Below are positions 2,786 to 62,394 of a DNA stretch of 64,000 bases, one piece after another. Source of the stretch: Octopus bimaculoides (taxonomy: Eukaryota); NCBI RefSeq assembly GCF_001194135.2, contig NC_068990.1, positions 7,955,997 through 8,019,996 on the forward strand, written 5' to 3'. The notes below the pieces were generated by a model. It did no database searches. It was given only the letters and a program-made list of their open reading frames with translations, and was not told where the DNA came from. Position 1 is the first letter of the stretch; each line of letters opens with the position of its first letter. The translations under genes and the position numbers were made by a program.

Positions 2786-3006
2786 GGCGGCGAGCTGGCA
2801 GAATCGTTAGCACGCCGGGCGAAATGCTTAGCGGTATTTCGTTTGTCTTTGTGTTCTGAATTCAATTTCCACTGAGGTCGACTTAGCATTTCATCCTTTC
2901 GGAGTCGATAAATTACGTACTGGAGTCAATGTAATCGACTTAATATCTTTGTTTCTCCTTGTTTGTCCCCTCTATGTTAAGCCCCTGTGGGCAATAAAGA
3001 AATAAG
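2786..3006 (+). mobile_element. tRNA-head SINE, family A (ggcggcgagctggcagaatcgttagcacgccgggcgaaatgcttagcgg...)
   Basis: Same ~220-bp unit recurs at 4642, 40845, 41085, 43986 and 53915. It has a B-box-like gttcaaattcc and an A-rich 3' end. Confidence 0.85.
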
Positions 3007-3624: not shown

Positions 3625-3750
3625 TCTCTCTCTCTCTCTCTCACTCTCTCTCTCACTCTCTCTCTCACTCTCTCTCTCNNNNNNNNNNNNNNNNNNNNNN
3701 NNNNNNNNNNNNNNNNNNNNNNNNNNNNNNNNNNNNNNNNNNNNNNCTCC

Positions 3751-3846: not shown

Positions 3847-4641
3847 GTCTGTGTGTATCTATGTCTATGTGAATGTATTTTGTACAATGAATGTCAACTA
3901 AATTCTAAGACAAATATTTTTAGCTATTTAATTTTCTTTAGTTTTGATACTTGTTCGAATATTATCTCTGTATTATTCAAACAAGAAATGGTGAGCTTAA
4001 TTAAAAAAAGTTTTTACTTTAAATATCATCGTTATTTAAATTCAACTAACGCTTTTATTAAAGTGAGCAAATATGTAAAGATACGAAAGAATTGTTCATT
4101 ATAAAACAATTAGTAGCAAGAGAAGCAATAGAAATATTTATCCCCACTTAAAAGTGGATATTGTATTAGAACAATGAATAATGTGATAGTTACCATGACA
4201 GAACCTCTCGTATGGCCTTTGGATGCGTATAAGCACTGTTGTATACATCACTAGCGGAGGTAAATCACCGCTTTCGCCGCCGCCGAGACAACCAGATCAT
4301 GTGATTTTGGTCTTCCCCATACTTGTCAATGGTAGACACTCGACTGCTGGAGATAGTAGCGATAGCGCACCTAGAGGTACACAAAGAATCACAGGGATTA
4401 AACAGGCGCTGATGTCGCGAAAGTCAGTGAGCTTACCAAAAATAAAATGTTCAACATATTTCTGAGGTTCTTGAACAGAGGAATATTTTTAAAATGTTAA
4501 TTTTTACTTTTAAGATTTCTTACATTCTTATATTATATTATATTATATTATATTATATTAAAGAAGAACGACAGTAATAAATTCTTATAATGTACGATAG
4601 TAACTTAACGGATGTAATCTAGTATATTATTAGGTTACATA

Positions 4642-4856
4642 TTCTTTTCTACTTTAGGCACAAAGTCCGAAATTTTTGGAGAGGGGGGCCAGTCGATTAG
4701 ATCCACCCCAGTACGCAACTGGTACTTAATTTATCGACCTCGAAAGGATGAAAAGCAAAGTCGACCTCGGCGGTATTTGAACTCAGAACGTACAGACAGA
4801 CGAAACGAGGCTAGGCATTTCGCCCGGCGTATTAACGTTTCTGCCAGCTCGCCGCC
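4642..4856 (-). mobile_element. SINE family A
   Basis: Reverse complement of the 2786 unit; ends ...ctgccagctcgccgcc on the + strand. Confidence 0.85.
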
Positions 4857-7800: not shown

Positions 7801-8691
7801 CAGAATTAAAAAGAAAAACTTGTGGATTTAGCGATCGATCATGGTAGTATATACATAACCACATATATATTCCGAAGGCGAAATGGTCGCAGAGCAACCT
7901 GAAATGAAGTGTTCAAGAACACAACGCAATGCTTTCACACACACACGCACACACACATACGCACGCGCACACACGCACACGTATATATAATCATTTCTAC
8001 TATAGGCACAATTTGCGGGGAGGGGGCCAGTCGATTAGATGGACTCCACTCTACAACTGGTACTTAATTTATATGTATATATATGTATATATATATATAT
8101 ATATNNNNNNNNNNNNNNNNNNNNNNNNNNNNNNNNNNNNNNNNNNNNNNNNNNNNNNNNNNNNNNNNNNNNNNNNNNNNNNNNNNNNNNNNNNNNNNNN
8201 NNNNNNNNNNNNNNNNNNNNNNNNNNNNNNNNNNNNNNNNNNNNNNNNNNNNNNNNNNNNNNNNNNNNNNNNNNNNNNNNNNNNNNNNNNNNNNNNNNNN
8301 NNNNNNNNNNNNNNNNNNNNNNNNNNNNNNNNNNNNNNNNNNNNNNNNNNNNNNNNNNNNNNNNNNNNNNNNNNNNNNNNNNNNNNNNNNNNNNNNNNNN
8401 NNNNNNNNNNNNNNNNNNNNNNNNNNNNNNNNNNNNNNNNNNNNNNNNNNNNNNNNNNNNNNNNNNNNNNNNNNNNNNNNNNNNNNNNNNNNNNNNNNNN
8501 NNNNNNNNNNNNNNNNNNNNNNNNNNNNNNNNNNNNNNNNNNNNNNNNNNNNNNNNNNNNNNNNNNNNNNNNNNNNNNNNNNNNNNNNNNNNNNNNNNNN
8601 NNNNNNNNNNNNNNNNNNNNNNNNNNNNNNNNNNNNNNNNNNNNNNNNNNNNNNNNNNNNNNNNNNNNNNNNNNNNNNNNNNNNNNNATAT

Positions 8692-10741: not shown

Positions 10742-11154
10742 NNNNNNNNNNNNNNNNNNNNNNNNNNNNNNNNNNNNNNNNNNNNNNNNNNNNNNNNNNN
10801 NNNNNNNNNNNNNNNNNNNNNNNNNNNNNNNNNNNNNNNNNNNNNNNNNNNNNNNNNNNNNNNNNNNNNNNNNNNNNNNNNNNNNNNNNNNNNNNNNNNN
10901 NNNNNNNNNNNNNNNNNNNNNNNNNNNNNNNNNNNNNNNNNNNNNNNNNNNNNNNNNNNNNNNNNNNNNNNNNNNNNNNNNNNNNNNNNNNNNNNNNNNN
11001 NNNNNNNNNNNNNNNNNNNNNNNNNNNNNNNNNNNNNNNNNNNNNNNNNNNNNNNNNNNNNNNNNNNNNNNNNNNNNNNNNNNNNNNNNNNNNNNNNNNN
11101 NNNNNNNNNNNNNNNNNNNNNNNNNNNNNNNNNNNNNNNNNNNNNNNNNNNNNN

Positions 11155-14689: not shown

Positions 14690-14887
14690 ACAGAAACAGG
14701 AAGCAAGAGTGAGAGAAAGTTGTGGTAGAAGAGTACAGCAGGGTTCGCCACCATCCCCTGCCGGAGCCTCGTGGAGCTTTAGGTGTTTTCGCCCAATAAA
14801 CACTCACAACGCCCGGTCTGGGAATCGAAACCTCGATCCTATGACCGCGAGTCCGCTGCCCTAACTACTGGGCCGTTGCGCCTCCAC
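14690..14887 (-). mobile_element. tRNA-head SINE, family C (5' part)
   Basis: Reverse complement of the 5' part of the SINE at 34145-34465. Confidence 0.8.
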
Positions 14888-22766: not shown

Positions 22767-23048
22767 ATATATATATATATATATATATACACGCATATAT
22801 ATGTGTGNNNNNNNNNNNNNNNNNNNNNNNNNNNNNNNNNNNNNNNNNNNNNNNNNNNNNNNNNNNNNNNNNNNNNNNNNNNNNNNNNNNNNNNNNNNNN
22901 NNNNNNNNNNNNNNNNNNNNNNNNNNNNNNNNNNNNNNNNNNNNNNNNNNNNNNNNNNNNNNNNNNNNNNNNNNNNNNNNNNNNNNNNNNNNNNNNNNNN
23001 NNNNNNNNNNNNNNNNNNNNNNNNNNATATATATATATATATATAAAC

Positions 23049-23522: not shown

Positions 23523-25563
23523 AGATTCTTATTTTAATTTTTCTGACTCTGTATTTGAACTGGTGCACGACACCGTTACATTTTTACAAAAAATTATTTA
23601 TCGGACAATCTCGTAAGTCGAACAGTTCCATCCAGTCCGTTCCAAAAGGGTTACTTGTATTTTTTTAATACATAAGCTTTTGCTTTAATAGTCTTACAGC
23701 AAAATATAACCTCATCAATAATTACGCCTTTAAAATTTAATTTTATACCCGCGACACCACGGACAATTTTCGATGTTTTCTGTAATGTAGATGTCCATCC
23801 GTGAGGGAAGATGATGGGCTGGCTCGCCTATGTAGATTTGGAGATACTTTCAAAATGTGTCGACTGCCATGATGGCGCTAGATCATGCATGCACATTTGC
23901 CAGTATCGTCGAATTTACAACAGGAATATCATACCGATGAGGTAATGAAGAGTTTTTCTTCTTCTAAACCGGAAACATGTCTATGATTAACTATGGCTAG
24001 TTTAGTTCATTATTTTTCTTCTTGTTTTGCCTATGTGAGTTGCGGGTAACTGCTATCTGTTGGAGTTTCAGCCTTTTTAGCTGCTATTTCTGAACTTCGG
24101 TATGTGGTGAAGCAACNNNNNNNNNNNNNNNNNNNNNNNNNNNNNNNNNNNNNNNNNNNNNNNNNNNNNNNNNNNNNNNNNNNNNNNNNNNNNNNNNNNN
24201 NNNNNNNNNNNNNNNNNNNNNNNNNNNNNNNNNNNNNNNNNNNNNNNNNNNNNNNNNNNNNNNNNNNNNNNNNNNNNNNNNNNNNNNNNNNNNNNNNNNN
24301 NNNNNNNNNNNNNNNNNNNNNNNNNNNNNNNNNNNNNNNNNNNNNNNNNNNNNNNNNNNNNNNNNNNNNNNNNNNNNNNNNNNNNNNNNNNNNNNNNNNN
24401 NNNNNNNNNNNNNNNNNNNNNNNNNNNNNNNNNNNNNNNNNNNNNNNNNNNNNNNNNNNNNNNNNNNNNNNNNNNNNNNNNNNNNNNNNNNNNNNNNNNN
24501 NNNNNNNNNNNNNNNNNNNNNNNNNNNNNNNNNNNNNNNNNNNNNNNNNNNNNNNNNNNNNNNNNNNNNNNNNNNNNNNNNNNNNNNNNNNNNNNNNNNN
24601 NNNNNNNNNNNNNNNNNNNNNNNNNNNNNNNNNNNNNNNNNNNNNNNNNNNNNNNNNNNNNNNNNNNNNNNNNNNNNNNNNNNNNNNNNNNNNNNNNNNN
24701 NNNNNNNNNNNNNNNNNNNNNNNNNNNNNNNNNNNNNNNNNNNNNNNNNNNNNNNNNNNNNNNNNNNNNNNNNNNNNNNNNNNNNNNNNNNNNNNNNNNN
24801 NNNNNNNNNNNNNNNNNNNNNNNNNNNNNNNNNNNNNNNNNNNNNNNNNNNNNNNNNNNNTATATATATATATATATATATGGAGAGACATAGGTAGAGA
24901 AGGAGAGAGAGAATAGAGGGACCGAGGGAGAGAGAGCGATAATATTTATTGCGTAACTGTGCATGTGTTTATTAAAAAATGGAAGCCACTTATTTATTTA
25001 TTCATTTATTTTCTTTTTTCGAAGATACTCCAGTTTACATCTAGATTGATCCTACTGCCGTCCCACAGGCTTCATTGCAGTTGTTTTCTGTTTCGAAAGG
25101 AAGACTTTGTTGTGTAAATAATCCTTTGAACGCATTGCCTGTTAATCTAATCTAAGTTTTTAATGTACTGTCGACATCGGGAATGATAGGTTTGCACATC
25201 AGCATTTCCTCGATGCACTTCTGTTTAGTGGACAATGGTCGGGGATTTAACGTTACATAATCGTTGCTGTTGGAAAATGTACTAATGTGTTTGCAGCTAA
25301 GTATATGCAAACTGTTTAGGAGAGGCAAATATAACTAACTTTTACAGTGCTGCAATTGAATATTTTATGACATATGGTGGTGGGAGGTAGATATTGATGG
25401 GAGTGAGAAGTTGTCTACTACATTTATTACTTCATTCATATTACACGTGCGTGTACGTGTGATTGTCTGTGTGTGTGCGTATGAGTGTCTGTGCGAGAGT
25501 GTGTGTGTATGTGAATGTGAATGTGTGTATGTGTGTGTGTGTGTGCGTGTGGGCGTGCGTGCG

Positions 25564-28063: not shown

Positions 28064-28476
28064 NNNNNNNNNNNNNNNNNNNNNNNNNNNNNNNNNNNNN
28101 NNNNNNNNNNNNNNNNNNNNNNNNNNNNNNNNNNNNNNNNNNNNNNNNNNNNNNNNNNNNNNNNNNNNNNNNNNNNNNNNNNNNNNNNNNNNNNNNNNNN
28201 NNNNNNNNNNNNNNNNNNNNNNNNNNNNNNNNNNNNNNNNNNNNNNNNNNNNNNNNNNNNNNNNNNNNNNNNNNNNNNNNNNNNNNNNNNNNNNNNNNNN
28301 NNNNNNNNNNNNNNNNNNNNNNNNNNNNNNNNNNNNNNNNNNNNNNNNNNNNNNNNNNNNNNNNNNNNNNNNNNNNNNNNNNNNNNNNNNNNNNNNNNNN
28401 NNNNNNNNNNNNNNNNNNNNNNNNNNNNNNNNNNNNNNNNNNNNNNNNNNNNNNNNNNNNNNNNNNNNNNNNNNAT

Positions 28477-30640: not shown

Positions 30641-33600
30641 AATTAATCAGTTCTCACACACTTCTGAAACATTTTATTGTTTATATATATATATATNNNN
30701 NNNNNNNNNNNNNNNNNNNNNNNNNNNNNNNNNNNNNNNNNNNNACAAAGAGATGCATTAGTATAACGCTCGGGAATTGAAAAAGTTTTTAACGTGTCGA
30801 GCTTACGCTCTCCCACAGAAACGAACACAGTAAGAAACAAGGAGAGAAAAAAAAAGGAGAGAAAAAATGTGTGTAGTGGTCAGCGATCTATCATGGCGAA
30901 TATATATATATGACTCTCTTATTCTTTCATTCTTTCTTTCTTTCTATCAGCCTCTTCACACTTACTTCGTTCTTTCCACTCTTCTTTCGTTCCCCTCTCT
31001 CACATTTCCTGGTTTTCTCTTCATTATCACCTTCTCTCCTCTTTCACTTCACTCTGTCCCTTTTCATTTTCTCTCGTCCCTCCTTAATTCTTCTATACCT
31101 CTGCCTCTACCACTCTCCTCTCTCTCCGCGTTTCCGGTGTTCGGCCAAGTCTAACCTTTGTTTCTTGGTTCGACTACCATGCGTGCAACATCTATATTCC
31201 TCCGCATGCCTGTCATTTCTTATGTCTCAGCCGTAAGGCGTCACTTCCATACGCACCAGCTTAATTTAATTCGTCCTTAGTCGAATGGCACCTGTTATTA
31301 ATGTTCTATTATATGCATTTGTATTTGTGTGCCATTTCTCCCCTTTTTCCGTCCATGTTTTCGTATACATTCGCTGCTTTCTTCCGAGGAATCAAGTGCT
31401 CTTAGTTTAGTTCTTCCTTGCGGCTGGCCAGATTGGAGCAATCTCAAGTATAACCAGCCGAAATTGCAAAGATAATCTGGAACTCGACAGAGGAAAGAAA
31501 ACTCCGAATGACCCGTTCTTGTTTTTTCTTGTCCCTTTTTTGTATCATCTGTCTGGATGGCTTGCGTTCTTGTCCCATTTTTTTTATTCCTTTATATATT
31601 TAAAGCAGTTGTATACTGCCAACTTAATGTGACAGTCCCGGTAAAGGAATCATACTGCTGCTAATTAGCCTTAGGAAGCTGGACCGCTTCCTGTCGGCCT
31701 TGACACATTTCCTGTGTCCCTATGTTTGTGAGGGGGAGACAAGCAAGCACCTCCACCTAGCCAAGCCTGCATTCAGGGACATGTTTCTGAGGACAGGCAT
31801 CTTTTCGGAGAAAGTACTAGGTCCCTATTTTTTCGGGTTTTACGTTATGAGTTCAAATTCCACCAAGGCCATGTTTATTATTCATTCCTTCAGGGTCAAT
31901 AAAATGGAAACCAATTGAAAAATAGGGTCTATGTAAGCCCCTACTCCCGCCCAAATTGCAGGCCTTGCGCCAGTAGTGGAAAGGTGATTTTTACATTAAT
32001 TATCGGTAGCTAAAAGGGAAAACTTTTGAGATTTTTACCAAGAACGCAAAACTAGAAAGAAATACATGGCATTCTCTTTTTTACTTCAACATAATCGCAC
32101 AGACAAAAATCGCACAGACAAAAATCGCACTACACTATGTGAATACATACATTAGTGCTTTTGATCTTGTAAGTAAATGCCTAACTCTCAGTCTCGATAA
32201 GCTTGGCTTTTTAGAAAAAGAAATTAGCCGACTTACATTTACAAATACAGTCTTTAAGCAGAAAAGTAAAACTATGCAAGATGTTTCTCACGTTTAAAAT
32301 GTCAAATTGTTTTCGTTATCTACTTTCCAGCGACGGAGGTTTGTATCTTCAAAGGAAGAATTTAAAGACTTGAAAACAGAAAAAGATCATACATACATAA
32401 CATGTAAATACATATATGTAAGTATACACGTATGCACATATATATCCGTACATGTATATATATGTGTGTGTGCGCGCGTGGACATGTTTCTGTTTGTGTA
32501 TACACATGTATGTATATATATGTACATGTGTGTGGATATGTATATGTGTATACTCACAAACACATATCCACATAAATATATGCTTACATATGCGCGTGTG
32601 ACATTCGTCTTTAAATTGTAGCCCGTTATATCCTAATTTAATAGTGCTCTATTTTGGCTGTATAACCGCAAGAAATTTTTCCTCACTTGTATTGTTGCAG
32701 TATTAAAATATATCACGTTGATATTTATTGCTGCGTTTTAGGGAAGGGTATAAAGGATAAAACTGGTTAATGCTTCTACACTGTCAATGCTATATTTTGT
32801 ATCTTCGATATAAATCATCATTGAAGAGTATCAACCCTTTTAGAAAATAAAAGCCACCCAGGAAGTAAAATATTTCATCGGAATTCCTTTCTTCTTAGTA
32901 AAGTATTTTACTCTATTTACGACGCACATGTGCCAGGTAAAGTTATTGAAGACATAAAATTTCCTCATCCTTGTGTATAGATTATAGCATGTGACGCTAT
33001 ATAAGTTAGCAGGAATTTTTGAAGTTAACAGAGGTACAGAGACAGACAGCATGCACCTATTTCAAACAACACCACCTGCAGTTCACCGCAGTGTTCTTTC
33101 TGTTCATCATTCATGTATACACATCTCAACCAAGTTCTGCTAAAGTTCTGTCCGATAGATTAGATTTGTGCACCAAAACAAAGGCGAAGTTTGAAGTAAA
33201 AGAAAATGCCATACAGGTATTTAAACCAAAACGAACTGTACCTTTTGTTGTAGCGTTATAAAAGATAAATTTAGAGTTAGAGAGACGAGAAAAAAACTGG
33301 AGTTATTCCAAAAGTCAAATATAGTCAATGGGCATCACCAACTGTGTACGTAAAAAAAAAAAAAAAAGAATAATAAAATCAGAGTGTGTGCTGATTTTTT
33401 GACTGGCTGAAACGAATGTCTTCAAGTGTTCAACTATCTGCTTCTGCGGAGGACATATTTGAGAAATTCAACGGAGGCAAGGTATTTTCTAAATTGGATC
33501 TCTCTGACGCGTACCTACAGATTAGTGTAGACGATGCACGTTCTAAATACCTAACAATTGACACATATAAGTTATCATTTGGCTTAAAAGTCGCCTGGCG

Positions 33601-34144
33601 ATTTTTCAACAGATTATCGCTGCAATTTTAGCGGACTGTGAATTCGCAATTCCATATCTGGATGATTTACTCATAAACAGTGAATCCCGAGACCAACAGG
33701 TAGATAACGTAAAATATGTGTTCAAAAAAATTAGGGACTATGAGTGAAGGAAAGTGTGATTTTTTCTTATTGAAAATAAAATATGTAGGAAAAATCATTG
33801 GCAGAAATGAACGTTGACAAGAGCCATCGAAGACAGATGCAATTAAAAATATGCTAAAGGCCGAAAAATATAACGACCTTACAAGCATTTTTGAGACGAA
33901 AATTATATTCCAAATATGCACACCGTATGAGCTCTATTGAATAATCTGCTAAGACAAGATATAAGGTGGACCAGGTCTGAAAATTATCAGGTGTTCAAGG
34001 AAATTAAAAAAAAAAGATTAACATCTGATTTGGTTTCAGCACACTTCGTTTCTGCAGTGGAGATTATTGTAACTTTAGATGCCTCTGAGTATGGGATGGG
34101 AGCAGTAATGCTATATGAATATAAAGATGGTAAAATGAAGGCGG

Positions 34145-34465
34145 GGTGGAGGCGCAATGGTCTAATGGTTAGGGCAGCGGACTCGCGGGCGGAGATTCGC
34201 AGTTTCGATTCCCAGACCGAGCATTGTGTGTGTTTATTGAGCGAAGACACCTAAAGCTCCACGAGGTTCCGGCAGTGGGTGGCGGCGACCCCTGTTGTAC
34301 TCTTTCGCCCCAACTTTCTCTCCACTCTTTCTTCTTGTTTCTTGAGTAACGCTGCGGTGGACTGGCGTCCCGTCAAGCTAGAGGAAAATATTCACCATAG
34401 AAACCGGGAAACCGGGCCCATGAGCCTGGCTAGGCTTGAAAAGGGCGCATAAAAAAAGATAAATA
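34145..34465 (+). mobile_element. tRNA-head SINE family C inserted in Gypsy RNaseH, with 13-bp TSD
   Basis: A-box-like ggcgcaatggtctaatgg, B-box-like gtttcgattcc, A-rich tail. TSD aaaatgaaggcgg (34132-34144) / aaaatgagggcgg (34466-34478). The Gypsy coding sequence resumes after it. Confidence 0.85.
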
Positions 34466-35965
34466 AAAATGAGGGCGGTAGTTCATGCCTCACTTACACT
34501 GATATCAGCAGAAAAAAAAAAACTTACTGCTAAATCGTAAAAGAGGGTTTAGCGATTATTTTTGCCGCAAAAAAGTTTCATAGATTTTTACACGGTAGGA
34601 ATTTTCGACTACAGACTCATCATTGTTCGTTATTATTTATATATGGGTCGAAGAAAGGAATCCCTACCCATACTGCTAATAGGCTGCCACTCTGGTGTAC
34701 TATATTATGGAACTATGATTTTAAGATTGAGTATATACAATCTAAGAAATTAAGTCATGCTGATTGTTTATCAAGACTGATTTCAAAAAGTGCTGAAGCA
34801 TTTGAAGATGACGTGATTGCTGCGTTGCGAACGGAAAATGAAATTAATGATGTTTTGTGTAACATCATACGTGAACTGCCAGTTACGTTACAAGATATAA
34901 AATTAAAATCGGAAAACGATAAATTCATTAAAAAATAAAAGAGCTGCTGCGGACTAAAAGAGATAAAAATATGAGCAACACCAATGCGAACCCATTCTTA
35001 ATGTGTGACAATGTGTTGATGTAAGCACAAAGTGTCGTAGTACCAGCTACACTACAGAAGCGATTGTTATAAGAATTTCACATTGGTTACCCAGGGATTT
35101 CGAGAATGAAATCGTTTAATTGAAAGTTATGTATATTGGCCAACATTGGACCGTGACATTGAAGAACTAGTGAAAGCATGCAGAAGGTGTGCCCAAGCTG
35201 CAAAAGTACCTCCCACTAAATGGCAACCGCTGCCAAAAACAAATATTCCATGGTCCAGACTGCATGTTGATTACGCAGGTCCACTTAAGGGTTTATATTA
35301 ACTTTTTATGGTGGACAGTTTTTCAAAGTGGCCTGAAGTGCATAAGTATAAAATGCCAACATCTGCGGTTACAGTACGTATTTTACACGAATTGTTCGCC
35401 AGATATGGTGTTCCTGATAACATTGTGTCTGATAATGGAACCTAATTTACCTTAGACAAGTTCAGAAAATTTACCGTTACATATACATACCAGGGCCTTG
35501 TAAATGATGGTGAGCAAGATTTTTCAAATATTGGAGAACATAACAAGGTCATTGCTGGGATTTATCCAATGGCTTAAAATTTTTAAAAGTTTTTTCATAA
35601 AATCCTTCCTTCCATCATTTCCAATAAACGAAAAAGCAGGAAAAAAAAACAAAAAAAAACAAGAGAAAAGATTTGTCATAGTTTAAAAGTTCTGAATTAT
35701 CTCCCTTGAAGACTGCCATATACAGGCAGAGAATGAGTTTCTAAAGAGATTAGAATAATTAAATTTCTAAAATCTAGGTAAATAAAGTAAATTAAGTAAG
35801 TAGTATGTAACGAAAATGTTTTAATTAATTATATAAGTAAAATAAAATGAGAGTTATTTTGTTTTTGAGATGTATAAATAAATTAATTGTAAATGTTGTT
35901 GCTATAAGATCATCGAATGTATTGAATAGTAAAGGGATATATAGAAATTGTCCACGAGGAAAAGC

Positions 35966-36128
35966 ATACTTACCTGGCACAGGGGTAAACCGTGATCAGC
36001 AAGGTGGTTCTTCCAGAGTGAGGCCCTTCCATTGCACTCCGGTTGGGTTGACCTTTGCGATCGTCCCTAATGTGGGCGATTCGGGTGCGCTATTTCTAAG
36101 TGTGGGGTCTGCGTTCGCGCTCACCCCG
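35966..36128 (+). ncRNA. U1: U1 spliceosomal snRNA, copy 1 (163 nt)
   Basis: ATACTTACCTGG 5' end; SL2 loop ATTGCACTCC; SL3 with taatgt loop; SL4 ggggtctgcgttcgcgctcacccc. Helix H shows covariation (gcac/gtgc versus vertebrate gcag/ctgc). Confidence 0.93.
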
Positions 36129-36150
36129 TAAATCAAACAAAGAATAGACT
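36129..36150 (+). terminator. Possible snRNA 3' box downstream of U1 (aatcaaacaaagaatagact); repeated at ~37497-37518
   Basis: Position right after U1 and resemblance to the AAA..AGA 3'-box consensus; same in both copies. Inference only. Confidence 0.35.
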
Positions 36151-37333
36151 ATCGCTAATGAATTTTTATGGTAGATAGTTTTTCAAAGTGGCCTGAAGTG
36201 CGTAAGTATAAAAAGCCAACATCTGCGGTTACAGTTCGTATTTTACACGAATTGTTAGCCAGATATGGTGTTCCTGATACCATTGTGTCTGATAATGGAA
36301 CCTAATTTACCTTAGACAAGTTCAGAAAATTTTGTAAAAGTTCGTTGTCGAACACGTGACCACTCCACCGTATCATCCTTGGTCAAATGGACAAGCGGTT
36401 CGCTTTGTTGACAATTCTAAGAGGGCGTTGAAAAAGGCGAACAATGAAGTAATGGACAACCGTGCGTTCAACAATTTCTATGAGTGTACCGAGTAGCACC
36501 TAATACGAATACCCCACCTGGAATGTCCGCCGCAGAAGCATCAGATCCGTTTTAGATAAGATGATACCGAGTGAAAATAGAAAACAGGAGAATAGCAAAA
36601 ACATTCTATCACATCTTTCTTTCGCATGCTCTCGGATGTTATAACCTGCCCGTCGAGGTATGGTATTTTTCAACATAACGGTATATAAATACTTTCTTAA
36701 AACTTTATGCATTGTTCATCTTTCGCATCTTACAACATGCAATTATAACAACAAATTTTTATCGTTACAACTGCTGTCTCGCATATTACATATTATTGTG
36801 TACCTAATCAATCTTACCATTACAATTGGTAACTACACTAATTAAAACCCGACCGTTACATATACATACCAGGGCCTTGTAAATGATGGCGAGCAAGCTT
36901 TTTAAAATATTGGAGAACATGACAAGGTCCTTGCTGGGATTTATCCAGTGGCTGAAAATTTTCAAAAGTTTTTTCTTAAAAACCTTCCTTCCATCATTTC
37001 CAATAAACGAATAAGCAGAAAAAAAAAAACAAGAGAAAAGATTTGTCGTAATTTAAGTTATGAATTATCTCCCTTGAAGACTGCCATATACAAGCAGAGA
37101 ATGAGTTTTTAAAGAGATTAGAATAATTAAATTTCTAAAATCTAGGTAAATAAAGTAAATTAAGTAAGTAGTATGTAACGAAAATGTTATAATTAATTGT
37201 ATAAGTAAAATAAAATGAGAGTTATTTTGTTTTTGAGATGTATAAATAAATTAATTGTAAATGTTGTTGCTATAAGATCATCGAATGTATTGAATAGTAA
37301 AGGGATATATAGAAATTGTCCATGAGAAAAAGC

Positions 37334-37495
37334 ATACTTACCTGGCACAGGGGTAAACCGTGATCAGCAAGGTGGTTCTCCCAGAGTGAGGCCCTTCCAT
37401 TGCACTCGGTTGGGTTGACCTTTGCGATCGCCTCAAATGTGGGCGATTCGGGTGCGCTATTTCTAAGTGTGGGGTCTGCGTTCGCGCTTACCCCG
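37334..37495 (+). ncRNA. U1: U1 spliceosomal snRNA, copy 2 (162 nt)
   Basis: Same as copy 1 apart from a few substitutions and a 1-nt deletion after ATTGCACTC. SL3 still pairs (atcgcct/gggcgat). Confidence 0.92.
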
Positions 37496-38088
37496 AAAAT
37501 CAAACAAAGAATAGACTATCGCTAATGAATTCTCCAATGGTCATACATTGGAGAAGCATTGTATTGTACATGCATAGTTATTTTTCGCTGCTATTTCAAG
37601 CAAGTCATTATCTACGGAATACTATTACGGACATTTTTTCTTGCGGACGAATGTGTATTTCGTATCCTATGTACATGTGCAGATTTTAGGCTGCTGTTTC
37701 TAGCAAGTCGATCCTTTATCTAATGGATTTAAATAAATTATCATATTCATATTTGATATATTTAGGTTCATATTTGATGATACCGAGTGAAAATAGAAAA
37801 CAGGCGAATAGCAAAAATGTTTCAAAATTCTTCAAGTTAGGTGAAGTTAAAAATATGGTAAAGAAAGCTGTGAGGACGGTGTAATTGTTAAACAAAATGG
37901 AAGAATGTTATTCCTGTAAAAAGAGGAACTGTCGAACATAAAAGATAAATTAACCAACTTAAAAACGATTCACAGAAAGAAAAAAAAAAAAAACAATCAC
38001 AAGAAAACAAACCTCCATGGAAGTTTTTGCAAGACACGTTTGAGATACCAACACCCAAACAATGGAGAAGTTAGGGGAGACTAATTCT

Positions 38089-38100
38089 AAAAAGAAGAGA
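38089..38100 (+). other. Polypurine tract of the Gypsy element
   Basis: aaaaagaagaga lies immediately before TGTTG. Confidence 0.6.
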
Positions 38101-38250
38101 TGTTGTGGAAGAATTCCGACTACGCCACAAGTGACTAAAAGTGGATTGGAATATTGCTATAAAATAAAGAACTATCAGCACATCAGAGTAAGCAGTTCAC
38201 AGTAATGAATACGTTCTTTGCCCCTGCTTCGTTAAATTATTTATCCAACA
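38101..38250 (+). repeat. Gypsy 3' LTR (~150 bp)
   Basis: TGTTG...CAACA termini directly after the PPT and downstream of the integrase C-terminus. No second copy seen in the window. Confidence 0.6.
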
Positions 38251-38255
38251 CCATG

Positions 38256-38290
<35 letters not shown>

Positions 38291-38410
38291 TGAATCCAAA
38301 CATGAACGAGCAAGAAAAGACACGGAAAAGCAACAACGCGAGGACGTAGAATAAGTACAGTGTTATTGGACGCTCGTGCAGTTACTGTTTATACCTCGTT
38401 CAGAGATTTA

Positions 38411-38442
<32 letters not shown>

Positions 38443-38509
38443 GTATATGTATATATATAATTTAAGAGATGAGGAATTATGTACATTATTTACATTATTC
38501 ACATTTGAC

Positions 38510-38767
38510 GGCGTAGTGGTTAAGAGCGCGGGCTATTAACTCCAAGATTCCGAGTTCGATTCCAGGCAGTGACCTCAATAGTAGTAGTAATAATAATAAT
38601 TATTATTATTATAATAAGAGCAACATGGAAAAATACATTTGGGATGAGAACCCAGGTTAGAAATTTCCCCAAGACACCTGATGAAGGCTGGAGGGTATTT
38701 CAGCCGAAACGTTGTTCACAACAAACAAGATGAGGACAAATATCCGTCAAATGTAAATATGTAAATA

Positions 38768-38772
<5 letters not shown>
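38510..38772 (+). mobile_element. tRNA-head SINE with internal (AAT)n and a hammerhead-ribozyme-like 3' region
   Basis: A box gcgtagtggtta and B box gagttcgattcc; CTGATGA (38678) - stem ggctg...cagcc - GAAAC (38706). Confidence 0.7.
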
Positions 38773-38821
<49 letters not shown>

Positions 38822-40844
38822 ACATATTGTCCTTTTTGCTATGTATTTCATACTATGTTTTCTACTGATTCTCTTCCTAATTTATGATGACAATGCGGCT
38901 GTTATATCTATCATGGTTAATACCTATGCAATTGTCTTGCCTTATTGATTCTCAGCAAACTATCTGTGTTGTGTATTCACAGATAAGTTGTAGTCGAAAA
39001 AAAAAAACTATGAGTTTCATTTGTGATAATTCCATCATTTGCATATAAGAAATTAAATGTTTCGATATAGAGTTATTATAAATGGTCTGGCGTAATTTTT
39101 AGAGATTTAGCTGCTACGTTTTGCAGGTTAAACGACCTTGTGTCAGCTTCCTATCAAACCATATTGGCTGGTTCTTCCCAGCTCCTTATATCTGAATCTT
39201 TCTATTTCGTATTTTCAGATATGATGAGTGTTTGCCTCTAGACATAATGTTTTGATGTGACATCATTATAGTTAAATTTCACTTGTCTTTTGGCTTACAA
39301 TGCACAAATCTAGTTTCCAATTCAATGTTAAGGCTTCAAAGATAAGATTAAATCAGAAATCCATATTAGTTTTCTTACTTCAATAGGATAAATCAATGAG
39401 ATGTCAAGATCTTTTGACAAAAATTTAGCTTACAATATTGTGTGATCTCCTTATCGATTACGTATAGATTACTATCTTGCCGAACGTCTTAGTTTGATAA
39501 ACTAAGTTCAAGCAGAACAAACCACACTGAAGCTACGTATTTTTCAACACCCCCGATACCTATGTAAAATATTAATACTAGCATTTACAAGTATTTAACT
39601 AACGCTATAATAAAAAAAAAATTCAGACACACAAGTATCTGGAGATTTATCCAGCATAAATTCATGGCAGCATTTCTCGGTTTCTGTAAAGAAAAACAGT
39701 CTCTGTTTCATTGATATATAAATGAGATGTATTTAGAAAAGGCAAGGTATAAACAAGTTTTAGATGTTTGAAGATACAGCATGTATTGACGTCATATAAT
39801 TTAAACTAATAAGATTTTTGTATTCGTCAAGTTGTCGTATTTTTTTTTTATAAAGTAATGCTCCAAGCACTAGATATTTAACTTCCCTGCTATGCCCTTC
39901 ATTAATTTCATTTCTGTTCCAGAAACAGCATGCAAATTCTAATATAGAGGTATGTGGCATAAAAATATCCTTCTTCGTATCCAATAAGAAAGCTAAATAT
40001 CTTCAGTTTACTAATAGCAGTAGGTTATCTGTAAATATCTCTGGAGATGAACTGCCAATTAGCATCGTAAATGACCTACAGCAGATTTACTTGCAGTCAT
40101 GCACGTTAAGCTAAGAGAAAACTGATAACAGAAAAAAAAATTACAATAAAACTGACCCCTACTTACGAGGCGATATGGATTAAAATGAATTCTCCCTCAC
40201 CGTCATTATAATAAAATGAAAAATACTGCACATTCCCTATATTTGTGCCCTTTGTGCAGTGGAAATATGTTGTTTCTTTAGGTTCTAGAAACTATTCAGG
40301 TAACAGTCTACCAGGCGTTAGTTCGTGTCCGACTTAAATGGTAATTTTTTTTCTCTAAAATGAGTTGAGATGGAATATTGAACTATAAGTCTTTTAAATG
40401 ATTACAAGCAGAAGTAAAACGACTTGGCAAGAAGCAATATAGATATAGCTACAGGGGTTAAGCAATTTAGTAGAGTGTTCATCAGAAAGTGTTGCTGCAG
40501 CAGCGAATTTTCCCAAAATACACTTCTATTTATAGTTAAAACGCTACATGACCTATTTTACTTTACTATTAATTTTATAGTGATCAGAATTCCGTTATGA
40601 CGATTTACTTACAGATTCAATGTATATGTTCAATACCAAGCCAAAAGTTAAATCTCGAGTTCAGATTTTATCTGTTCAACATTTATGTAATATATTCTAC
40701 ACCACTACTTTATTTCCACAACGACGCTGTTGATTCAGACTGGTTTCTCATTCGGAGCTGCCTAATCTAGCGCGCATTTTCACCTCTATTTTTCCCTATC
40801 CGACACTCAGTCTATATAGCTGATTAATATTTTATTCATCCTAA

Positions 40845-41277
40845 GGCGGCGAGCTAGCAGAAACGTTAGCACGCCGGGCGAAATGCTTAGCGGCATTTCG
40901 TCTGCCGTTACGTTCTGACTTCAATTTCTACCGCGGTCGACTTTGCCTTTCATCTTTCGGGGTCGATAAACCAAGAACCAGTTACGCACTGGGGTCGATG
41001 TAATCGACTTAATCCCTTTGTCTGTTCTTCTTTGTTCCTTCTGTTTTTAGCCTCTGGTGGGCAATAACGAAATATGAAACGTAAGCACGCCGAGCGAAAT
41101 ACTTAGCTGCATTTCGTCTCTCTTTACGTTCTGAGTTCAAATTCCGCCATGGTAGACTTAGCCTTTCATCCTTTCGAGGTCGATAAATTAAGTACCAGTT
41201 GCGTACTGGGGTCGATCTAATCGACTGGCTCCCCTCTCCCCAAATTTCGATCTTTGTGCCTAGAGTAGAAAAGAATA
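40845..41277 (+). mobile_element. Two tandem SINE family A copies (40845-41072 full length; 41085-41277 5'-truncated)
   Basis: Both align to the 2786 unit. Confidence 0.85.
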
Positions 41278-42039
41278 TTTTATTCATCTTTTTAATCACT
41301 GAAATATAGATCAGACACTCCTATTGCACAGTACTCTGTGATTATATTAAAGTAAACGATTGTATCTTTAATACAAATATTCATGCTAGCGAACTTACAA
41401 TATTTCTAAGCCTCGAAACAGCAAACAACAGAATTGAAATAGTGTCAGGTGTAGTAATTTATACTCTAATAGCAGGCAAAACATACTTCCATTAGCTAGG
41501 TGAACTTAAGGATTGCGTATTAGGAGAATATCTTGCTCGAGGACATCTAAAATACTTTTGGAATGTTTCAAATCAATAACCGTGACCTGGTAATATAATA
41601 TTTTCCATAATAATATTATCTGAGGTGTGTCATAGTTGTAAGTCAATATTTTCGTTCTATTTTATTCAGTTAATCATATTTGAATATTGCGAATATAATT
41701 ACACGTTAACACGCTGAAATGCTGATACGATATTGATAAATTATAGTATGGATAACAATGATAATAATTAACACTCGTACAGCTATTACTGATGATGACG
41801 ACGGTGATGATGATGATGATGATAATGTAAACGTTAGACTATTAATTTTGAGGGGAGTAGTGATGTCGAATACGTTGGCATCATTTCTAGATTGGTACTT
41901 TATTTTATCGACCTCAAAAAGTTAAAAGAGAATGTTGACCTATGTGAGATTTGATTTTAAAATGAAAAGAAAGTGGAGAAATACGGCATTTTGTCCGATA
42001 TTCTACTAGTTCTGTCAAAATACACTAAAATTCAAACAT

Positions 42040-43985: not shown

Positions 43986-44185
43986 TTTCAAGCTTTGGAA
44001 TAAGGCCAGAAATTTCGTGGGAGGGACAGGTGAACCTCAGTACTCAACTGGGTGGTACTTACTTTATTGACCCTGAAGGATGAAAGGTAAAGTTGACCTC
44101 GGAGGAATTTGAACTCAAGAACTGAAGACGAACTAAATGCCGCTAAGCATTTTACCCGGCGTGCTAAAGATTCTGCTAGCTCACC
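43986..44185 (-). mobile_element. SINE family A (diverged)
   Basis: Reverse-complement similarity to the 2786 unit. Confidence 0.75.
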
Positions 44186-44479
44186 GATTTTAAACGAAGC
44201 AATATTAAAATAACATATTCTGCTTAAAAATAAAATAAAACAGCAAACAAGAAATTTAAAGGTTGAGAGGTTTGCGATCGGTATAGAAAAAGACTGCCAT
44301 TCATCAACTATGCTGTCATTTAATATCCACCCTTAGTACAGAAATAACATTATAAGAAACGCGAATATAATAAAAATTATATAGAAGACTACTTTCTTTT
44401 CTTCTAGGTGGAAACTTAGATTCGGCTTCTCCAGACCTGCAATCTCTCCAACATGCATTAACCGTCTTTTTTCTTCTGC

Positions 44480-49680: not shown

Positions 49681-50887
49681 AAAAATCATTTTAACAAATT
49701 CTATGAGACCGAAATATCTGAGATACATACTAATAATTACTAATATTTCAGTCGATTCAGTTTAGCCGTTCGAAGAAGATATTGGCCATATTGAAAACGG
49801 GGAAAAAAAGTCCAATAAATTGTAACTGATCAGTTTTATATGGACTTCCAATGTGTGTTAAGCCGCAAAAGTCTGTTTGCTGAATAACAAAATAAACAAT
49901 TAAATAAATGAAAAATTGAAAAAGAGACTAAACAAAGCAAGTGACAGTAGATTATTTCAAGTAACTGACGTCCCTTCTATAATTAAGCACGTCATTTTAG
50001 CAATGAAATGGAAATGATAATATTGTAACGAAGCGAGAAACCTTCTCATCACGAGCGCTGTCTGTGTTTTTCTATTTGATTATTGATCTGTTTCTTTTTC
50101 TAGTGTGTGTTGCTCTTTGCCTCTTGCACACAGTTCTTGATGACAGAAAAGAGATTCGCTTTCGAACATTCATAGCGTGCATTGTTAATTGTTGTGAACG
50201 TATTCTCTGAAAAGAGTTGTAACTCATCTTAGAGATTTAAAACCATCAGAAGACTGATATGTTTCATATGGAACAAAAAAGAGGCTCATATTCAAATAGT
50301 TTCTAATATATATATATGTGTANNNNNNNNNNNNNNNNNNNNNNNNNNNNNNNNNNNNNNNNNNNNNNNNNNNNNNNNNNNNNNNNNNNNNNNNNNNNNN
50401 NNNNNNNNNNNNNNNNNNNNNNNNNNNNNNNNNNNNNNNNNNNNNNNNNNNNNNNNNNNNNNNNNNNNNNNNNNNNNNNNNNNNNNNNNNNNNNNNNNNN
50501 NNNNNNNNNNNNNNNNNNNNNNNNNNNNNNNNNNNNNNNNNNNNNNNNNNNNNNNNNNNNNNNNNNNNNNNNNNNNNNNNNNNNNNNNNNNNNNNNNNNN
50601 NNNNNNNNNNNNNNNNNNNNNNNNNNNNNNNNNNNNNNNNNNNNNNNNNNNNNNNNNNNNNNNNNNNNNNNNNNNNNNNNNNNNNNNNNNNNNNNNNNNN
50701 NNNNNNNNNNNNNNNNNNNNNNNNNNNNNNNNNNNNNNNNNNNNNNNNNNNNNNNNNNNNNNNNNNNNNNNNNNNNNNNNNNNNNNNNNNNNNNNNNNNN
50801 NNNNNNNNNNNNNNNNNNNNNNNNNNNNNNNNNNNNNNNNNNNNNNNNNNNNNNNNNNNNNNNNNNNNNNNNNNNNNNNNNNNNNNN

Positions 50888-53914: not shown

Positions 53915-54107
53915 AGCCGGGCGAAATGCTTAGCGGTATTTCATCTGTCTACGTTCTGAGTTCAAATTCCACCGCGGTCGACTTTGCCTTTCATCCTTCC
54001 GGGTTCGATAAATTAAGTACCAGTTGCGTACTGGAATCGATCTAATCGACTGCCGACTGCCCCACTTCCCTCAAAAATTCGGGGCCTTGCGCCTAGGGTA
54101 GAAAAGC
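53915..54107 (+). mobile_element. SINE family A (5'-truncated)
   Basis: Aligns to the 2786 and 41085 units. Confidence 0.85.
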
Positions 54108-54338
54108 ATTCCCAAGTCAAGGCTCCAGCTCAAATGCCCACCACATCATGGACTCTGCTTCTTGCATCCAATGTAACTGGTTTTGGTGTGAAACTACTCA
54201 ATAAACAGAGTCTGCCGCAAATGAAGGCAACCATGCCAGTATTAACTCAGTTTGCAGGAATCAGACCAAGTAGCACAAAGCAATTAATTCGACATCCTAA
54301 TGAATCTGCTAATCCATCTACACACACACACATATACG

Positions 54339-59945: not shown

Positions 59946-60658
59946 CTAACGGTACACACACGCGCACACACACACACACACACACATACACACATACACA
60001 CACNNNNNNNNNNNNNNNNNNNNNNNNNNNNNNNNNNNNNNNNNNNNNNNNNNNNNNNNNNNNNNNNNNNNNNNNNNNNNNNNNNNNNNNNNNNNNNNNN
60101 NNNNNNNNNNNNNNNNNNNNNNNNNNNNNNNNNNNNNNNNNNNNNNNNNNNNNNNNNNNNNNNNNNNNNNNNNNNNNNNNNNNNNNNNNNNNNNNNNNNN
60201 NNNNNNNNNNNNNNNNNNNNNNNNNNNNNNNNNNNNNNNNNNNNNNNNNNNNNNNNNNNNNNNNNNNNNNNNNNNNNNNNNNNNNNNNNNNNNNNNNNNN
60301 NNNNNNNNNNNNNNNNNNNNNNNNNNNNNNNNNNNNNNNNNNNNNNNNNNNNNNNNNNNNNNNNNNNNNNNNNNNNNNNNNNNNNNNNNNNNNNNNNNNN
60401 NNNNNNNNNNNNNNNNNNNNNNNNNNNNNNNNNNNNNNNNNNNNNNNNNNNNNNNNNNNNNNNNNNNNNNNNNNNNNNNNNNNNNNNNNNNNNNNNNNNN
60501 NNNNNNNNNNNNNNNNNNNNNNNNNNNNNNNNNNNNNNNNNNNNNNNNNNNNNNNNNNNNNNNNNNNNNNNNNNNNNNNNNNNNNNNNNNNNNNNNNNNN
60601 NNNNNNNNNNNNNNNNNNNNNNNNNNNNNNNNNNNNNNNNNNNNNNNNNNNNNNNNNN

Positions 60659-61790: not shown

Positions 61791-62394
61791 TGAGGAGTTA
61801 GTTGTCCCCATTGCCACCTGTTACCTCCTTTGGTCCACTCTGTAGATTCATTCTTATTTTTGAAGCATCCAAACTGGCGAGACCCCTTTGTCACAAGAAT
61901 TGATTACTTCACAATATCCCTTGAAAAACTAATTTAAATAGCGAAAACCGGTTGGATATCACAATATCTATAAAATATGTATATATTTTTTAAAAAAGTT
62001 CTTTATAAAAATATATTAAACTATGTGAAACGAAGGCATTTCTCTTCCACTTTTTATATGTTTTCCATATATTTTCATGTTATAGTTTTCCCACGTGCTG
62101 TAAACGGAATCTCCAATATTTTTGCACCTTTGTTATATATTTTTATATTACTATATCTNNNNNNNNNNNNNNNNNNNNNNNNNNNNNNNNNNNNNNNNNN
62201 NNNNNNNNNNNNNNNNNNNNNNNNNNNNNNNNNNNNNNNNNNNNNNNNNNNNNNNNNNNNNNNNNNNNNNNNNNNNNNNNNNNNNNNNNNNNNNNNNNNN
62301 NNNNNNNNNNNNNNNNNNNNNNNNNNNNNNNNNNNNNNNNNNNNNNNNATATATATATACACACATATAAATTTAATGAATGGAGTAAAACGCA

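What the first reader, a model, noticed from the sequence alone, without database searches (positions are those of the whole stretch)
33135..38250. A Gypsy retrotransposon relic carrying two complete U1 snRNA gene cassettes inside its integrase
Seen: integrase coding sequence stops at 35472, resumes at 36163, stops at 36601 and resumes at 37776, then runs to the IN C-terminus, PPT and 3' LTR. Both interruptions contain a full-length U1 with about 490 bp of identical-type upstream flank and a 3'-box-like downstream flank. Established: retroposed U1 pseudogenes and U1-derived SINEs (SINEU) lack upstream promoter flank, and Dada transposons insert into snRNA genes, which is the opposite topology. 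Inference: a whole U1 transcription unit has moved at the DNA level into an LTR element. This could be a route for U1 gene dispersal or amplification, or cargo capture by this Gypsy family.
Basis: partly seen in the sequence, partly recalled or inferred. Interest (0 to 1): 0.8.

Follow-up and report, generated by a model that had tools for sequence, protein, structure and literature searches.

The report
U1 gene copies pasted into dead Gypsy
Two full-length copies of a U1 spliceosomal RNA gene, promoter flank included, sit inside the integrase of a long-dead octopus Gypsy retrotransposon; the long duplications of integrase sequence around each one point to a single local DNA repair or replication accident rather than to a retrotransposon carrying cargo.

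Summary
Rfam finds two complete U1 genes at 35966-36129 and 37334-37496. They lie in a 5'-truncated Ty3/Gypsy relic (RT, RNase H, integrase, PPT, 3' LTR), and all four junction coordinates are correct.

Each insert is flanked by a direct duplication of the integrase target: 170 bp (35303-35472 = 36163-36332) and 42 bp (36560-36601 = 37776-37817). Three paralogous copies of the same Gypsy family in Octopus bimaculoides and O. sinensis carry both segments once and have no U1, so these are true insertions.

Cassette 1 (692 bp) is a sub-interval of cassette 2 (1174 bp). Cassette-to-cassette divergence (4.0%) equals that of the 170-bp target duplicate (4.1%). Both target copies share a premature stop codon. 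I therefore read this as one DNA-level templated insertion plus a local copy, made by template switching or break repair in an already dead element. Gypsy cargo capture and two independent transpositions fit less well.

Both U1 copies have since mutated at sites that are invariant in outgroup U1s, at the same rate as their flanks, so they are probably pseudogenes. No donor locus, orthologue or read data could be reached. Interest is modest.

The parts
33128..35472 (+). Ty3/Gypsy relic, 5'-truncated: RT, RNase H, integrase zinc finger and the first part of the rve core. It has many stops and frameshifts and no 5' LTR, gag or protease.
   Evidence: Pfam RVT_1, RT_RNaseH_2, RT_RNaseH, Integrase_H2C2 and rve. 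Colinear blastn to the O. bimaculoides copy L003 8694-10327 and the O. sinensis copies L004 and L008. The 5' boundary comes from the alignment.
34147..34458 (+). SINE-like insertion in the RNase H region, with an A-rich tail and a diverged target duplication of about 20 bp. It is not part of the U1 event.
   Evidence: Absent from L003 (window 34144 aligns to L003 9733, and 34529 to 9766). A second copy lies at 14692-14887 on the minus strand, 85% identical. Sequence read.
35303..35472 (+). Target duplicate B1: 170 bp of the integrase core, left of cassette 1.
   Evidence: 95.9% identical to 36163-36332. Single copy in L003, L004 and L008. Carries the shared TAA stop.
35473..36164 (+). U1 cassette 1 (692 bp): 493 bp of upstream flank, U1, and 35 bp of downstream flank.
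   Evidence: Aligns to 36852-37531 with 27 substitutions in 680 sites and 3 indels.
35938..35944 (+). TATA-like box TATATAG at -28 of U1 copy 1. The same box lies at 37306-37312 for copy 2.
   Evidence: Sequence, and comparison with the U1 upstream regions of L001 and L002. Its promoter role is inferred.
35966..36129 (+). U1 snRNA copy 1, full length.
   Evidence: Rfam 126.2 bits. Private derived changes C47T, C99T, A103T and A164T.
36134..36148 (+). 3' box CAAACAAAGAATAGA at +5 to +19. The same box lies at 37501-37515 for copy 2.
   Evidence: Conserved in position and sequence downstream of the U1 genes of L001 and L002.
36163..36332 (+). Target duplicate B2, where the integrase restarts 170 bp back.
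36333..36559 (+). Integrase segment C, the continuation of the rve core.
   Evidence: Colinear with L003 10328-10568.
36560..36601 (+). Target duplicate D1 (42 bp), left of cassette 2.
   Evidence: 97.6% identical to 37776-37817. Single copy in L003, L004 and L008.
36602..37775 (+). U1 cassette 2 (1174 bp): unique flank X 36602-36851, core 36852-37531, unique flank Y 37532-37775.
   Evidence: X and Y have no match elsewhere in the window or in the Gypsy paralogs.
37334..37496 (+). U1 snRNA copy 2, full length.
   Evidence: Rfam 121.4 bits. Private derived changes delC74, C101T and C157T.
37776..37817 (+). Target duplicate D2, where the integrase restarts 42 bp back.
37818..38100 (+). Integrase C-terminal remnant and the polypurine tract (about 38089-38100).
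   Evidence: Colinear with L003 10607-10990. PPT read.
38101..38258 (+). 3' LTR remnant. It starts TGTTGTGG, has a 53-bp internal deletion and runs into an (AT)n microsatellite.
   Evidence: Aligns to both LTRs of L003 (7076-7287 and 11007-11218).

Best explanation
A segment of a U1 snRNA gene locus was copied at the DNA level into the integrase region of an already inactivated, 5'-truncated Ty3/Gypsy relic. The segment carried about 730 bp of upstream flank, U1, the 3' box and about 280 bp downstream. The copying was done by a break-repair or replication template-switching process, not by a transposase, an integrase or reverse transcription. The polymerase or broken end left the integrase, copied U1-locus DNA, and re-entered the integrase upstream of where it had left. 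This produces the direct target duplications of 42 bp around cassette 2 and 170 bp around cassette 1. The two cassettes are not independent arrivals. Either both were made in one multi-switch event of the FoSTeS/MMBIR type, or cassette 1 was copied in cis from cassette 2 shortly afterwards. An equivalent route is a tandem duplication of B-C-D-X-core followed by loss of C-D-X. Since then both U1 copies and all duplicated flanks have drifted neutrally, so the U1 copies are most likely DNA-mediated ('class I'-type) pseudogenes. Shown directly: the anatomy, the empty sites, the equal divergence of the duplicates, the shared stop codon, and decay in both U1 copies. Inferred: the repair or replication mechanism and the single-event timing.
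For: Empty sites: B and D are single copy and uninterrupted in the paralogous copies L003 (O. bimaculoides), L004 and L008 (O. sinensis). Cassette 1 is exactly the central 692 bp of cassette 2, and the two lie about 0.7 kb apart in the same orientation. Equal age: B/B' 7/170 = 4.1%, core/core' 27/680 = 4.0%, D/D' 1/42 = 2.4%, with Fisher p = 1.0 for each against the core. Both B copies share the TAA where L003 and L004 have CAA/CAG, so the integrase already carried an inactivating stop when B was duplicated. The junctions have 0-2 nt of microhomology, no terminal inverted repeats and no A-tail, and the target duplications of 42 and 170 bp are far longer than those a transposase makes. The upstream flank and the 3' box are both present, so a processed U1 RNA cannot be the source. 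U1 decay: 4 private changes in copy 1 and 3 in copy 2, five of them at positions invariant in L001, L002 and the sister copy. The U1 substitution rate of 3.7% is the same as the upstream flank's 4.4% (p = 0.82). No U1 was found in about 88 kb around five other octopus copies of this Gypsy lineage, L003, L004 and L007-L009.
Against: No donor U1 locus from this genome could be retrieved. It is therefore unproven that X, the upstream flank and Y are the normal U1 gene flanks, and microhomology at junctions J3 and J4 cannot be scored. Microhomology at J1 is 0 nt and at J2 only 2 nt, which fits NHEJ capture at staggered breaks as well as MMBIR. The substitution density is uneven: 4/221 in the proximal 221 bp of promoter against 17/261 in the distal part (p = 0.013). 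This could mean later gene conversion or constraint, and it blurs the dating. The window comes from a gap-rich scaffold and no reads were available to confirm the junctions. Only three paralogs informative for both sites were seen, all chosen because they have annotated ORFs.
Confidence: 0.6

Rival explanations
1. There were two independent DNA-level insertions from distant U1 donor loci into the same integrase, about 1.1 kb apart. The same repair mechanism or a local fragile site would account for both. Cassette 1 would then be a shorter capture, not a copy of cassette 2.
For: Each cassette has its own pair of junctions and its own target duplication. If U1 genes are homogenised by concerted evolution, two donors would look identical at capture, so the 4.0% cassette divergence remains compatible.
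Against: Two random hits within 1.1 kb of a multi-gigabase genome, in the same orientation, are very unlikely without targeting. The cassette divergence equals the B/B' divergence, which is what a common origin at the moment B was duplicated predicts. Cassette 1 lies entirely inside the extent of cassette 2.
Confidence: 0.13
2. Cargo capture during Gypsy reverse transcription. Reverse transcriptase switched between Gypsy RNA and a co-packaged read-through transcript of a U1 locus, as in retroviral transduction. This created a chimeric element that then integrated here. Backward re-entry after each switch produced the duplications.
For: Forced copy-choice recombination does produce insertions bracketed by duplications. 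The inserts are in the sense orientation of pol. A PPT and a 3' LTR follow the integrase.
Against: It needs a long read-through transcript that includes at least 730 bp of non-transcribed U1 promoter flank. None of the five other octopus copies of this lineage examined has U1. Both B copies carry a premature stop. The element lacks a 5' LTR, gag and protease. There is no evidence of amplification.
Confidence: 0.07
3. The U1 cassette is itself a mobile DNA unit of an undescribed kind. It might be eccDNA monomers from a tandem U1 array that reintegrate, or an element that makes long and variable target duplications. On this reading it inserted twice.
For: There are long target duplications at both inserts. 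The 1174-bp size is in the range of the tandem snRNA gene units known in other invertebrates (my own knowledge, not tested here). Both inserts carry an intact transcription unit.
Against: The two inserts have different termini, 36602/37775 against 35473/36164, so there are no defined element ends. There are no terminal repeats and no coding capacity. No other copy occurs in the 64-kb window or in about 88 kb of other octopus DNA. X and Y show no circular-permutation overlap.
Confidence: 0.07
4. Assembly artefact: chimeric joins or gap-filling errors in a gap-rich short-read scaffold placed U1-locus sequence inside a Gypsy copy.
For: The window has 12 N gaps. U1 genes and Gypsy copies are both repeats.
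Against: There is no N within 32000-39000. The junctions share at most 2 nt, so a k-mer graph misjoin is not expected. The duplicated segments differ by about 4%, which is not what duplicated gap edges or alleles would give. The structure is internally coherent: the integrase is colinear across both inserts.
Confidence: 0.05

Closest known systems
DNA-mediated ('class I') U1 pseudogenes and variant U1 genes of human. Source: Denison & Weiner 1982, Mol Cell Biol 2:815, whose title is cited in the reference list read; the description of the classes is from my own knowledge.
   Same: Full-length U1 copies that keep homology to gene flanks on both sides. They arose by DNA duplication rather than retroposition and then drift.
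   Different: The human examples are segmental duplicates near or derived from the U1 cluster. Here a segment of about 1.2 kb was copied into a retrotransposon relic with long target duplications and then doubled locally.
Templated insertions and duplication-insertion rearrangements from replication template switching (FoSTeS, Lee et al. 2007; MMBIR, Hastings et al. 2009; my own knowledge).
   Same: Inserted sequence copied from another template. Re-entry upstream of the exit point gives direct duplications. Several switches cluster within a few kb. Microhomology at the joins is short or absent.
   Different: Those were defined mostly in human disease loci and cancer. Here the mechanism is inferred from an event about 4% diverged, and the donor has not been seen.
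Retroposed U1 pseudogenes (classes II and III) and U1-derived SINEs (SINEU).
   Same: They contain U1-derived sequence outside a U1 locus.
   Different: Those lack the upstream promoter flank, are often 3'-truncated or A-tailed, and have short target duplications. Here 482-493 bp of upstream flank and the 3' box are present and there is no A-tail.
Dada DNA transposons (Kojima & Jurka 2013, PMC3706591).
   Same: An association between a transposable element and U1 genes.
   Different: Dada inserts at one specific site inside U1 with 6-7 bp target duplications. Here U1 is uninterrupted and it is the inserted sequence.
Retroviral or LTR-element transduction of host sequence.
   Same: Host sequence lies inside pol, in the sense orientation, flanked by duplications.
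   Different: No evidence of propagation. The promoter flank is included. The host element was already inactivated and is 5'-truncated.

Membership tests
Ty3/Gypsy LTR retrotransposon (the host element) | pol domain order RT, then RNase H, then integrase (H2C2 zinc finger plus rve core) | tested here: met
   Pfam hits in that order along 33395-36340. Best protein relatives are the 'K02A2.6-like' proteins of Octopus and Argonauta.
Ty3/Gypsy LTR retrotransposon (the host element) | A pair of LTRs with a PBS and a PPT | tested here: inconclusive
   The window has only the PPT and the 3' LTR (38089-38258). The paralog L003 has both LTRs (212 bp, 85% identical) and a TGG... PBS. The 5' LTR, gag and protease are missing here.
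Ty3/Gypsy LTR retrotransposon (the host element) | Intact coding capacity, meaning an active element | tested here: not met
   Many stops and frameshifts, a SINE insertion, and a premature TAA shared by both B copies.
U1 spliceosomal snRNA gene | Full-length U1 with the 5' splice-site recognition sequence and four stem-loops | tested here: met
   Rfam RF00003 model positions 1-166, at 126 and 121 bits. AUACUUACCUG is intact. An independent U1 (L001) has the same score and the same non-canonical pairs.
U1 spliceosomal snRNA gene | snRNA-type promoter (PSE) and 3' box | tested here: inconclusive
   The 3' box is conserved at +5 to +19 against L001 and L002, and there is a TATA-like box at -28. 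No PSE consensus for cephalopods was available.
U1 spliceosomal snRNA gene | Purifying selection or function | tested here: not met
   Seven differences, split 4 to 3 between the copies. Five lie at sites invariant in the outgroups. The rate equals that of the flanks. Expression was not testable.
Retroposed U1 pseudogene / SINEU | No upstream gene flank, an A-rich 3' end, and short target duplications | tested here: not met
   482-493 bp of shared upstream flank, no A-tail, and target duplications of 42 and 170 bp.
Dada transposon association | Element inserted at a fixed site inside U1 with a 6-7 bp target duplication | tested here: not met
   Both U1 copies are uninterrupted. The defining features come from PMC3706591.
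DNA-mediated (class I-type) U1 pseudogene | Flanking homology to a U1 gene locus on both sides of the coding region | tested here: inconclusive
   Met between the two cassettes. No independent U1 locus of this genome could be obtained.
Template-switch (FoSTeS/MMBIR-type) rearrangement | Templated insert plus a duplication at re-entry, with clustered switches | tested here: met
   The order is A-B-[core]-B-C-D-[X-core-Y]-D-E. A template for cassette 1 is present 0.7 kb away.
Template-switch (FoSTeS/MMBIR-type) rearrangement | Microhomology at breakpoints | tested here: inconclusive
   J1 has 0 nt and J2 has 2 nt (TT). J3 and J4 cannot be scored without the donor.

The most novel reading that the evidence does not exclude
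Octopus U1 transcription units are mobile as DNA cassettes. Possible routes are reintegrating circles from a U1 array, or capture and spread by this Gypsy lineage. They would seed new U1 loci, with long target duplications as the footprint, and this site would be one of many.
Probability: 0.07. Interest if true: 0.7.

Novelty: new member of a known kind. Interest (0 to 1): 0.27.

Why it matters
It is a clean, datable footprint showing how a small RNA gene can be copied, promoter and all, to a new site without any transposition machinery. It is also a caution: a host gene inside a retrotransposon need not be cargo. If genome-wide searches showed many such cassettes, it would bear on how snRNA gene families disperse in cephalopods. 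As a single, decaying locus it mainly matters for annotation: two probable U1 pseudogenes, one nested repeat structure, and a SINE and a Gypsy family for octopus repeat libraries.

Tried and rejected
1. I tried to reach other U1 loci by searching the ORF that spans the U1 promoter and U1. Only U1 genes of other organisms came back (L001, L002), and none had this flank.
2. Exact scans of the metagenome collection for a promoter 30-mer and a U1 32-mer gave 0 hits.
3. I looked for an annotated orthologue of the relic with integrase and RT/RNase H queries. Only paralogs came back, at 69% amino-acid identity or less. The ENA contigs (ERZ21867824; L005, L006) belong to a more distant organism, at 65% nucleotide identity.
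4. I searched for host-gene exons in the window in order to fetch a syntenic locus. No convincing exon ORFs turned up, and the four ORFs I tested with Pfam, all of which lie outside the finding, gave no hit.
5. Helitron, terminal-inverted-repeat transposon and LINE-mediated insertion are rejected. There are no terminal repeats, no CTRR or hairpin end and no A-tail, the two inserts have different termini, and the target duplications are too long.
6. I looked for other small RNA genes such as 5S, tRNA or other snRNAs in flanks X and Y. None was found at E <= 1.
7. The bacterial promoter and terminator scanner was not used, because it does not apply to a eukaryote.
8. Papers on U1 in cephalopods or on snRNA genes captured by LTR elements: none found.
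9. I did not build a repaired or consensus sequence of the element. Only unrepaired fragments were translated.

Full report
WHAT IS THERE. Rfam's U1 model (RF00003) matches end to end twice on the plus strand, at 35966-36129 (126.2 bits) and 37334-37496 (121.4 bits). The gathering score is 69.5. Nothing else in 33000-38400 matches any Rfam family, even at E <= 1. The surrounding sequence is a decayed Ty3/Gypsy-type element. Unrepaired reading-frame fragments hit RVT_1 (weakly), RT_RNaseH_2/RT_RNaseH, Integrase_H2C2 and rve, in that order. The closest proteins are the 'K02A2.6-like' predictions of Octopus bimaculoides (69% identity), Argonauta hians and O. sinensis, so the window is octopod DNA.

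I fetched paralogous copies of the same family: L003 (O. bimaculoides CM046618.1), and L004 and L008 (O. sinensis). They align colinearly with the window from about 33128-33140 to about 38283. L003 has a pair of 212-bp LTRs, 85% identical, that start TGTTGTGG, with a TGG... primer-binding site after the 5' LTR. Both of its LTRs align to window 38101 to about 38258, which is preceded by the polypurine tract AAAAAGAAGAGA. The window element is 5'-truncated, with no 5' LTR, gag or protease. It also carries a SINE-like insertion at about 34147-34458 that L003 lacks.

The four break coordinates are exact, but the integrase does not simply resume after each insert. After cassette 1 (35473-36164) the integrase restarts 170 bp back: 36163-36332 repeats 35303-35472 at 95.9% identity. 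After cassette 2 (36602-37775) it restarts 42 bp back: 37776-37817 repeats 36560-36601 at 97.6%. Writing the integrase as A-B-C-D-E, the locus reads A-B-[core]-B-C-D-[X-core-Y]-D-E.

In L003, L004 and L008 the segments B and D occur once and are uninterrupted. These are empty sites. They show that the U1 segments are insertions and that the duplications were created along with them. Cassette 1 (692 bp) corresponds exactly to the central part of cassette 2. Cassette 2 has a further 250 bp (X) on the left and 244 bp (Y) on the right, and neither matches anything else in the window or in the Gypsy paralogs.

WHAT THE CASSETTES CONTAIN. The shared core has 493 bp (copy 1) or 482 bp (copy 2) upstream of U1, the U1 gene, and 35 bp downstream. 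The downstream flank holds CAAACAAAGAATAGA at +5 to +19. The same type of motif sits at the same distance after two unrelated U1 genes that I recovered from other organisms (L001, L002). This fits the snRNA 3' box. A TATA-like TATATAG lies at -28. The U1 of L001 gets the same Rfam score and shows the same non-canonical pairs and the same unusual Sm-site region, so the window U1s descend from a normal U1 for this lineage. Promoter flank plus 3' box, with no A-tail, excludes a processed-RNA origin.

ONE EVENT OR TWO, AND IN WHAT KIND OF ELEMENT. Substitution divergence is as follows.
- B/B': 7/170, or 4.1%.
- Core against core: 27/680, or 4.0%, plus three indels.
- D/D': 1/42, or 2.4%.
- None differs from the core (Fisher p = 1.0 for each).

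The B duplication was necessarily born when cassette 1 was made. The equal divergence therefore means the two cassettes shared a common ancestor at that same moment. Cassette 1 was copied from cassette 2, or from the same donor in the same event. Cassette 1 also lies wholly within the extent of cassette 2, in the same orientation and 0.7 kb away. Two independent arrivals are therefore much the less likely reading.

Both B copies carry the same in-frame TAA (GGAACCTAATTT) where L003 has CAA and L004 has CAG. The integrase already carried an inactivating mutation when the rearrangement happened. With the 5' truncation, and with no U1 in about 88 kb around five other octopus copies of this Gypsy lineage, L003, L004 and L007-L009, I see no support for cargo capture by an active Gypsy.

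MECHANISM (INFERRED). The junctions show 0 nt (J1, 35472|35473) and 2 nt (J2, 36164|36165, TT) of microhomology. J3 and J4 cannot be scored without the donor. There are no terminal inverted repeats and no Helitron-like ends. The two inserts have different termini. Target duplications of 42 and 170 bp are far beyond those made by a transposase or an integrase (Dada makes 6-7 bp).

An insert bracketed by a long direct duplication of the target is the expected footprint of template switching with backward re-entry, as in FoSTeS/MMBIR (my own knowledge). It is also the expected footprint of a DNA fragment captured at a staggered double-strand break that is then filled in. The simplest history has four switches between the integrase and a U1 locus in one event. 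An equally workable history has two steps: insertion of X-core-Y with the D duplication, then a local copy of the core with the B duplication. That second step could equally be a tandem duplication of B-C-D-X-core followed by loss of C-D-X. I put 0.6 on this family of explanations.

ARE THE U1 COPIES FUNCTIONAL? Probably not. The copies differ at seven positions. Polarised with L001 and L002, copy 1 has four private changes (C47T, C99T, A103T, A164T) and copy 2 has three (delC74, C101T, C157T). Five of the seven sites are invariant in both outgroups and in the sister copy. The U1 substitution rate (6/163, 3.7%, plus one indel) is the same as that of the upstream flank (21/482, 4.4%; p = 0.82). 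Both copies are therefore drifting.

One oddity remains. The proximal 221 bp of promoter has only 4 differences, against 17 in the distal 261 bp (p = 0.013). The proximal part is 22% G+C, so low mutability is a sufficient explanation, but later gene conversion or constraint is not excluded.

ARTEFACT? The window has 12 N gaps, so it comes from a gap-rich scaffold, but there is none in 32000-39000. The joins share at most 2 nt, so a k-mer graph would not create them. The duplicates differ by about 4%, which is not what duplicated gap edges or alleles would give. I give an artefact about 0.05. Only reads can settle it.

COMPARISON WITH KNOWN CASES. The closest known things are the DNA-mediated ('class I') U1 pseudogenes and variant U1 genes of human, and templated duplication-insertion rearrangements. 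For the former, the Denison & Weiner 1982 title appears in the reference list read, and the class definitions are from my own knowledge. This locus is not a retroposed U1 pseudogene or a SINEU, because the flank is present and there is no A-tail. It is not a Dada association, because U1 is uninterrupted. No paper in the held library links U1 genes with cephalopods or with capture by LTR elements.

LIMITS. I could not reach any other U1 locus of this genome, any orthologous locus, or any reads. Three points remain open:
- the identity of the donor;
- the genome-wide copy number of the cassette;
- the choice between the single-event and two-step versions.

VERDICT. This is a new example of a known kind of event. 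Interest is about 0.27.

Noticed in passing
window 34147-34458 (+); second copy 14692-14887 (-): A SINE-like element with a tRNA-like head (GGTGGAGGCGCAATGGTCTAATGGTTAGGG...), an A-rich tail and a diverged target duplication of about 20 bp sits in the RNase H region of the Gypsy relic. It is absent from the paralog L003. ARAGORN and Rfam do not call it a tRNA.
   Followed up: partly
window 40821-41278, also 2783-3007, 4639-4882, 44034-44186, 53916-54109, 7987-8072: Another short interspersed repeat family, about 150-240 bp and 77-88% identical between copies. Two adjacent copies lie at 40860-41009 and 41076-41226. It was not classified.
   Followed up: no
window 714-811, 3679-3746, 7410-7680, 8105-8687, 10742-11154, 22808-23026, 24117-24860, 28064-28474, 30697-30744, 50323-50887, 60004-60658, 62159-62348: Twelve runs of N, mostly next to AT, AC or CT microsatellites. 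The window comes from a gap-rich scaffold, which matters for how far any structural call here can be trusted.
   Followed up: partly
window 35745-35965 vs 37113-37333: The proximal 221 bp upstream of the two U1 copies differ at only 4 sites, against 17 of 261 in the distal flank (p = 0.013). Low G+C (22%), gene conversion and promoter constraint are all possible causes.
   Followed up: partly
L008 6472-6714 (O. sinensis CM016866.1): In this paralogous Gypsy copy the 3' part of the integrase matches the window in inverted orientation, so that copy carries a local inversion.
   Followed up: no
L001 269-432 (ENA ERZ23499376 metagenome scaffold_67836): A metagenome contig carries a U1 gene 92% identical to the window copies, with the same unusual Sm-site region (AUUUCUAAG). 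It is presumably host or prey DNA from a related mollusc in that sample.
   Followed up: no
L004 5284-8172 (O. sinensis CM016874.1): A complex of long, nearly identical (99.7%) direct and inverted repeats with a period of about 600 bp lies just upstream of that Gypsy copy. It is unrelated to the finding.
   Followed up: no
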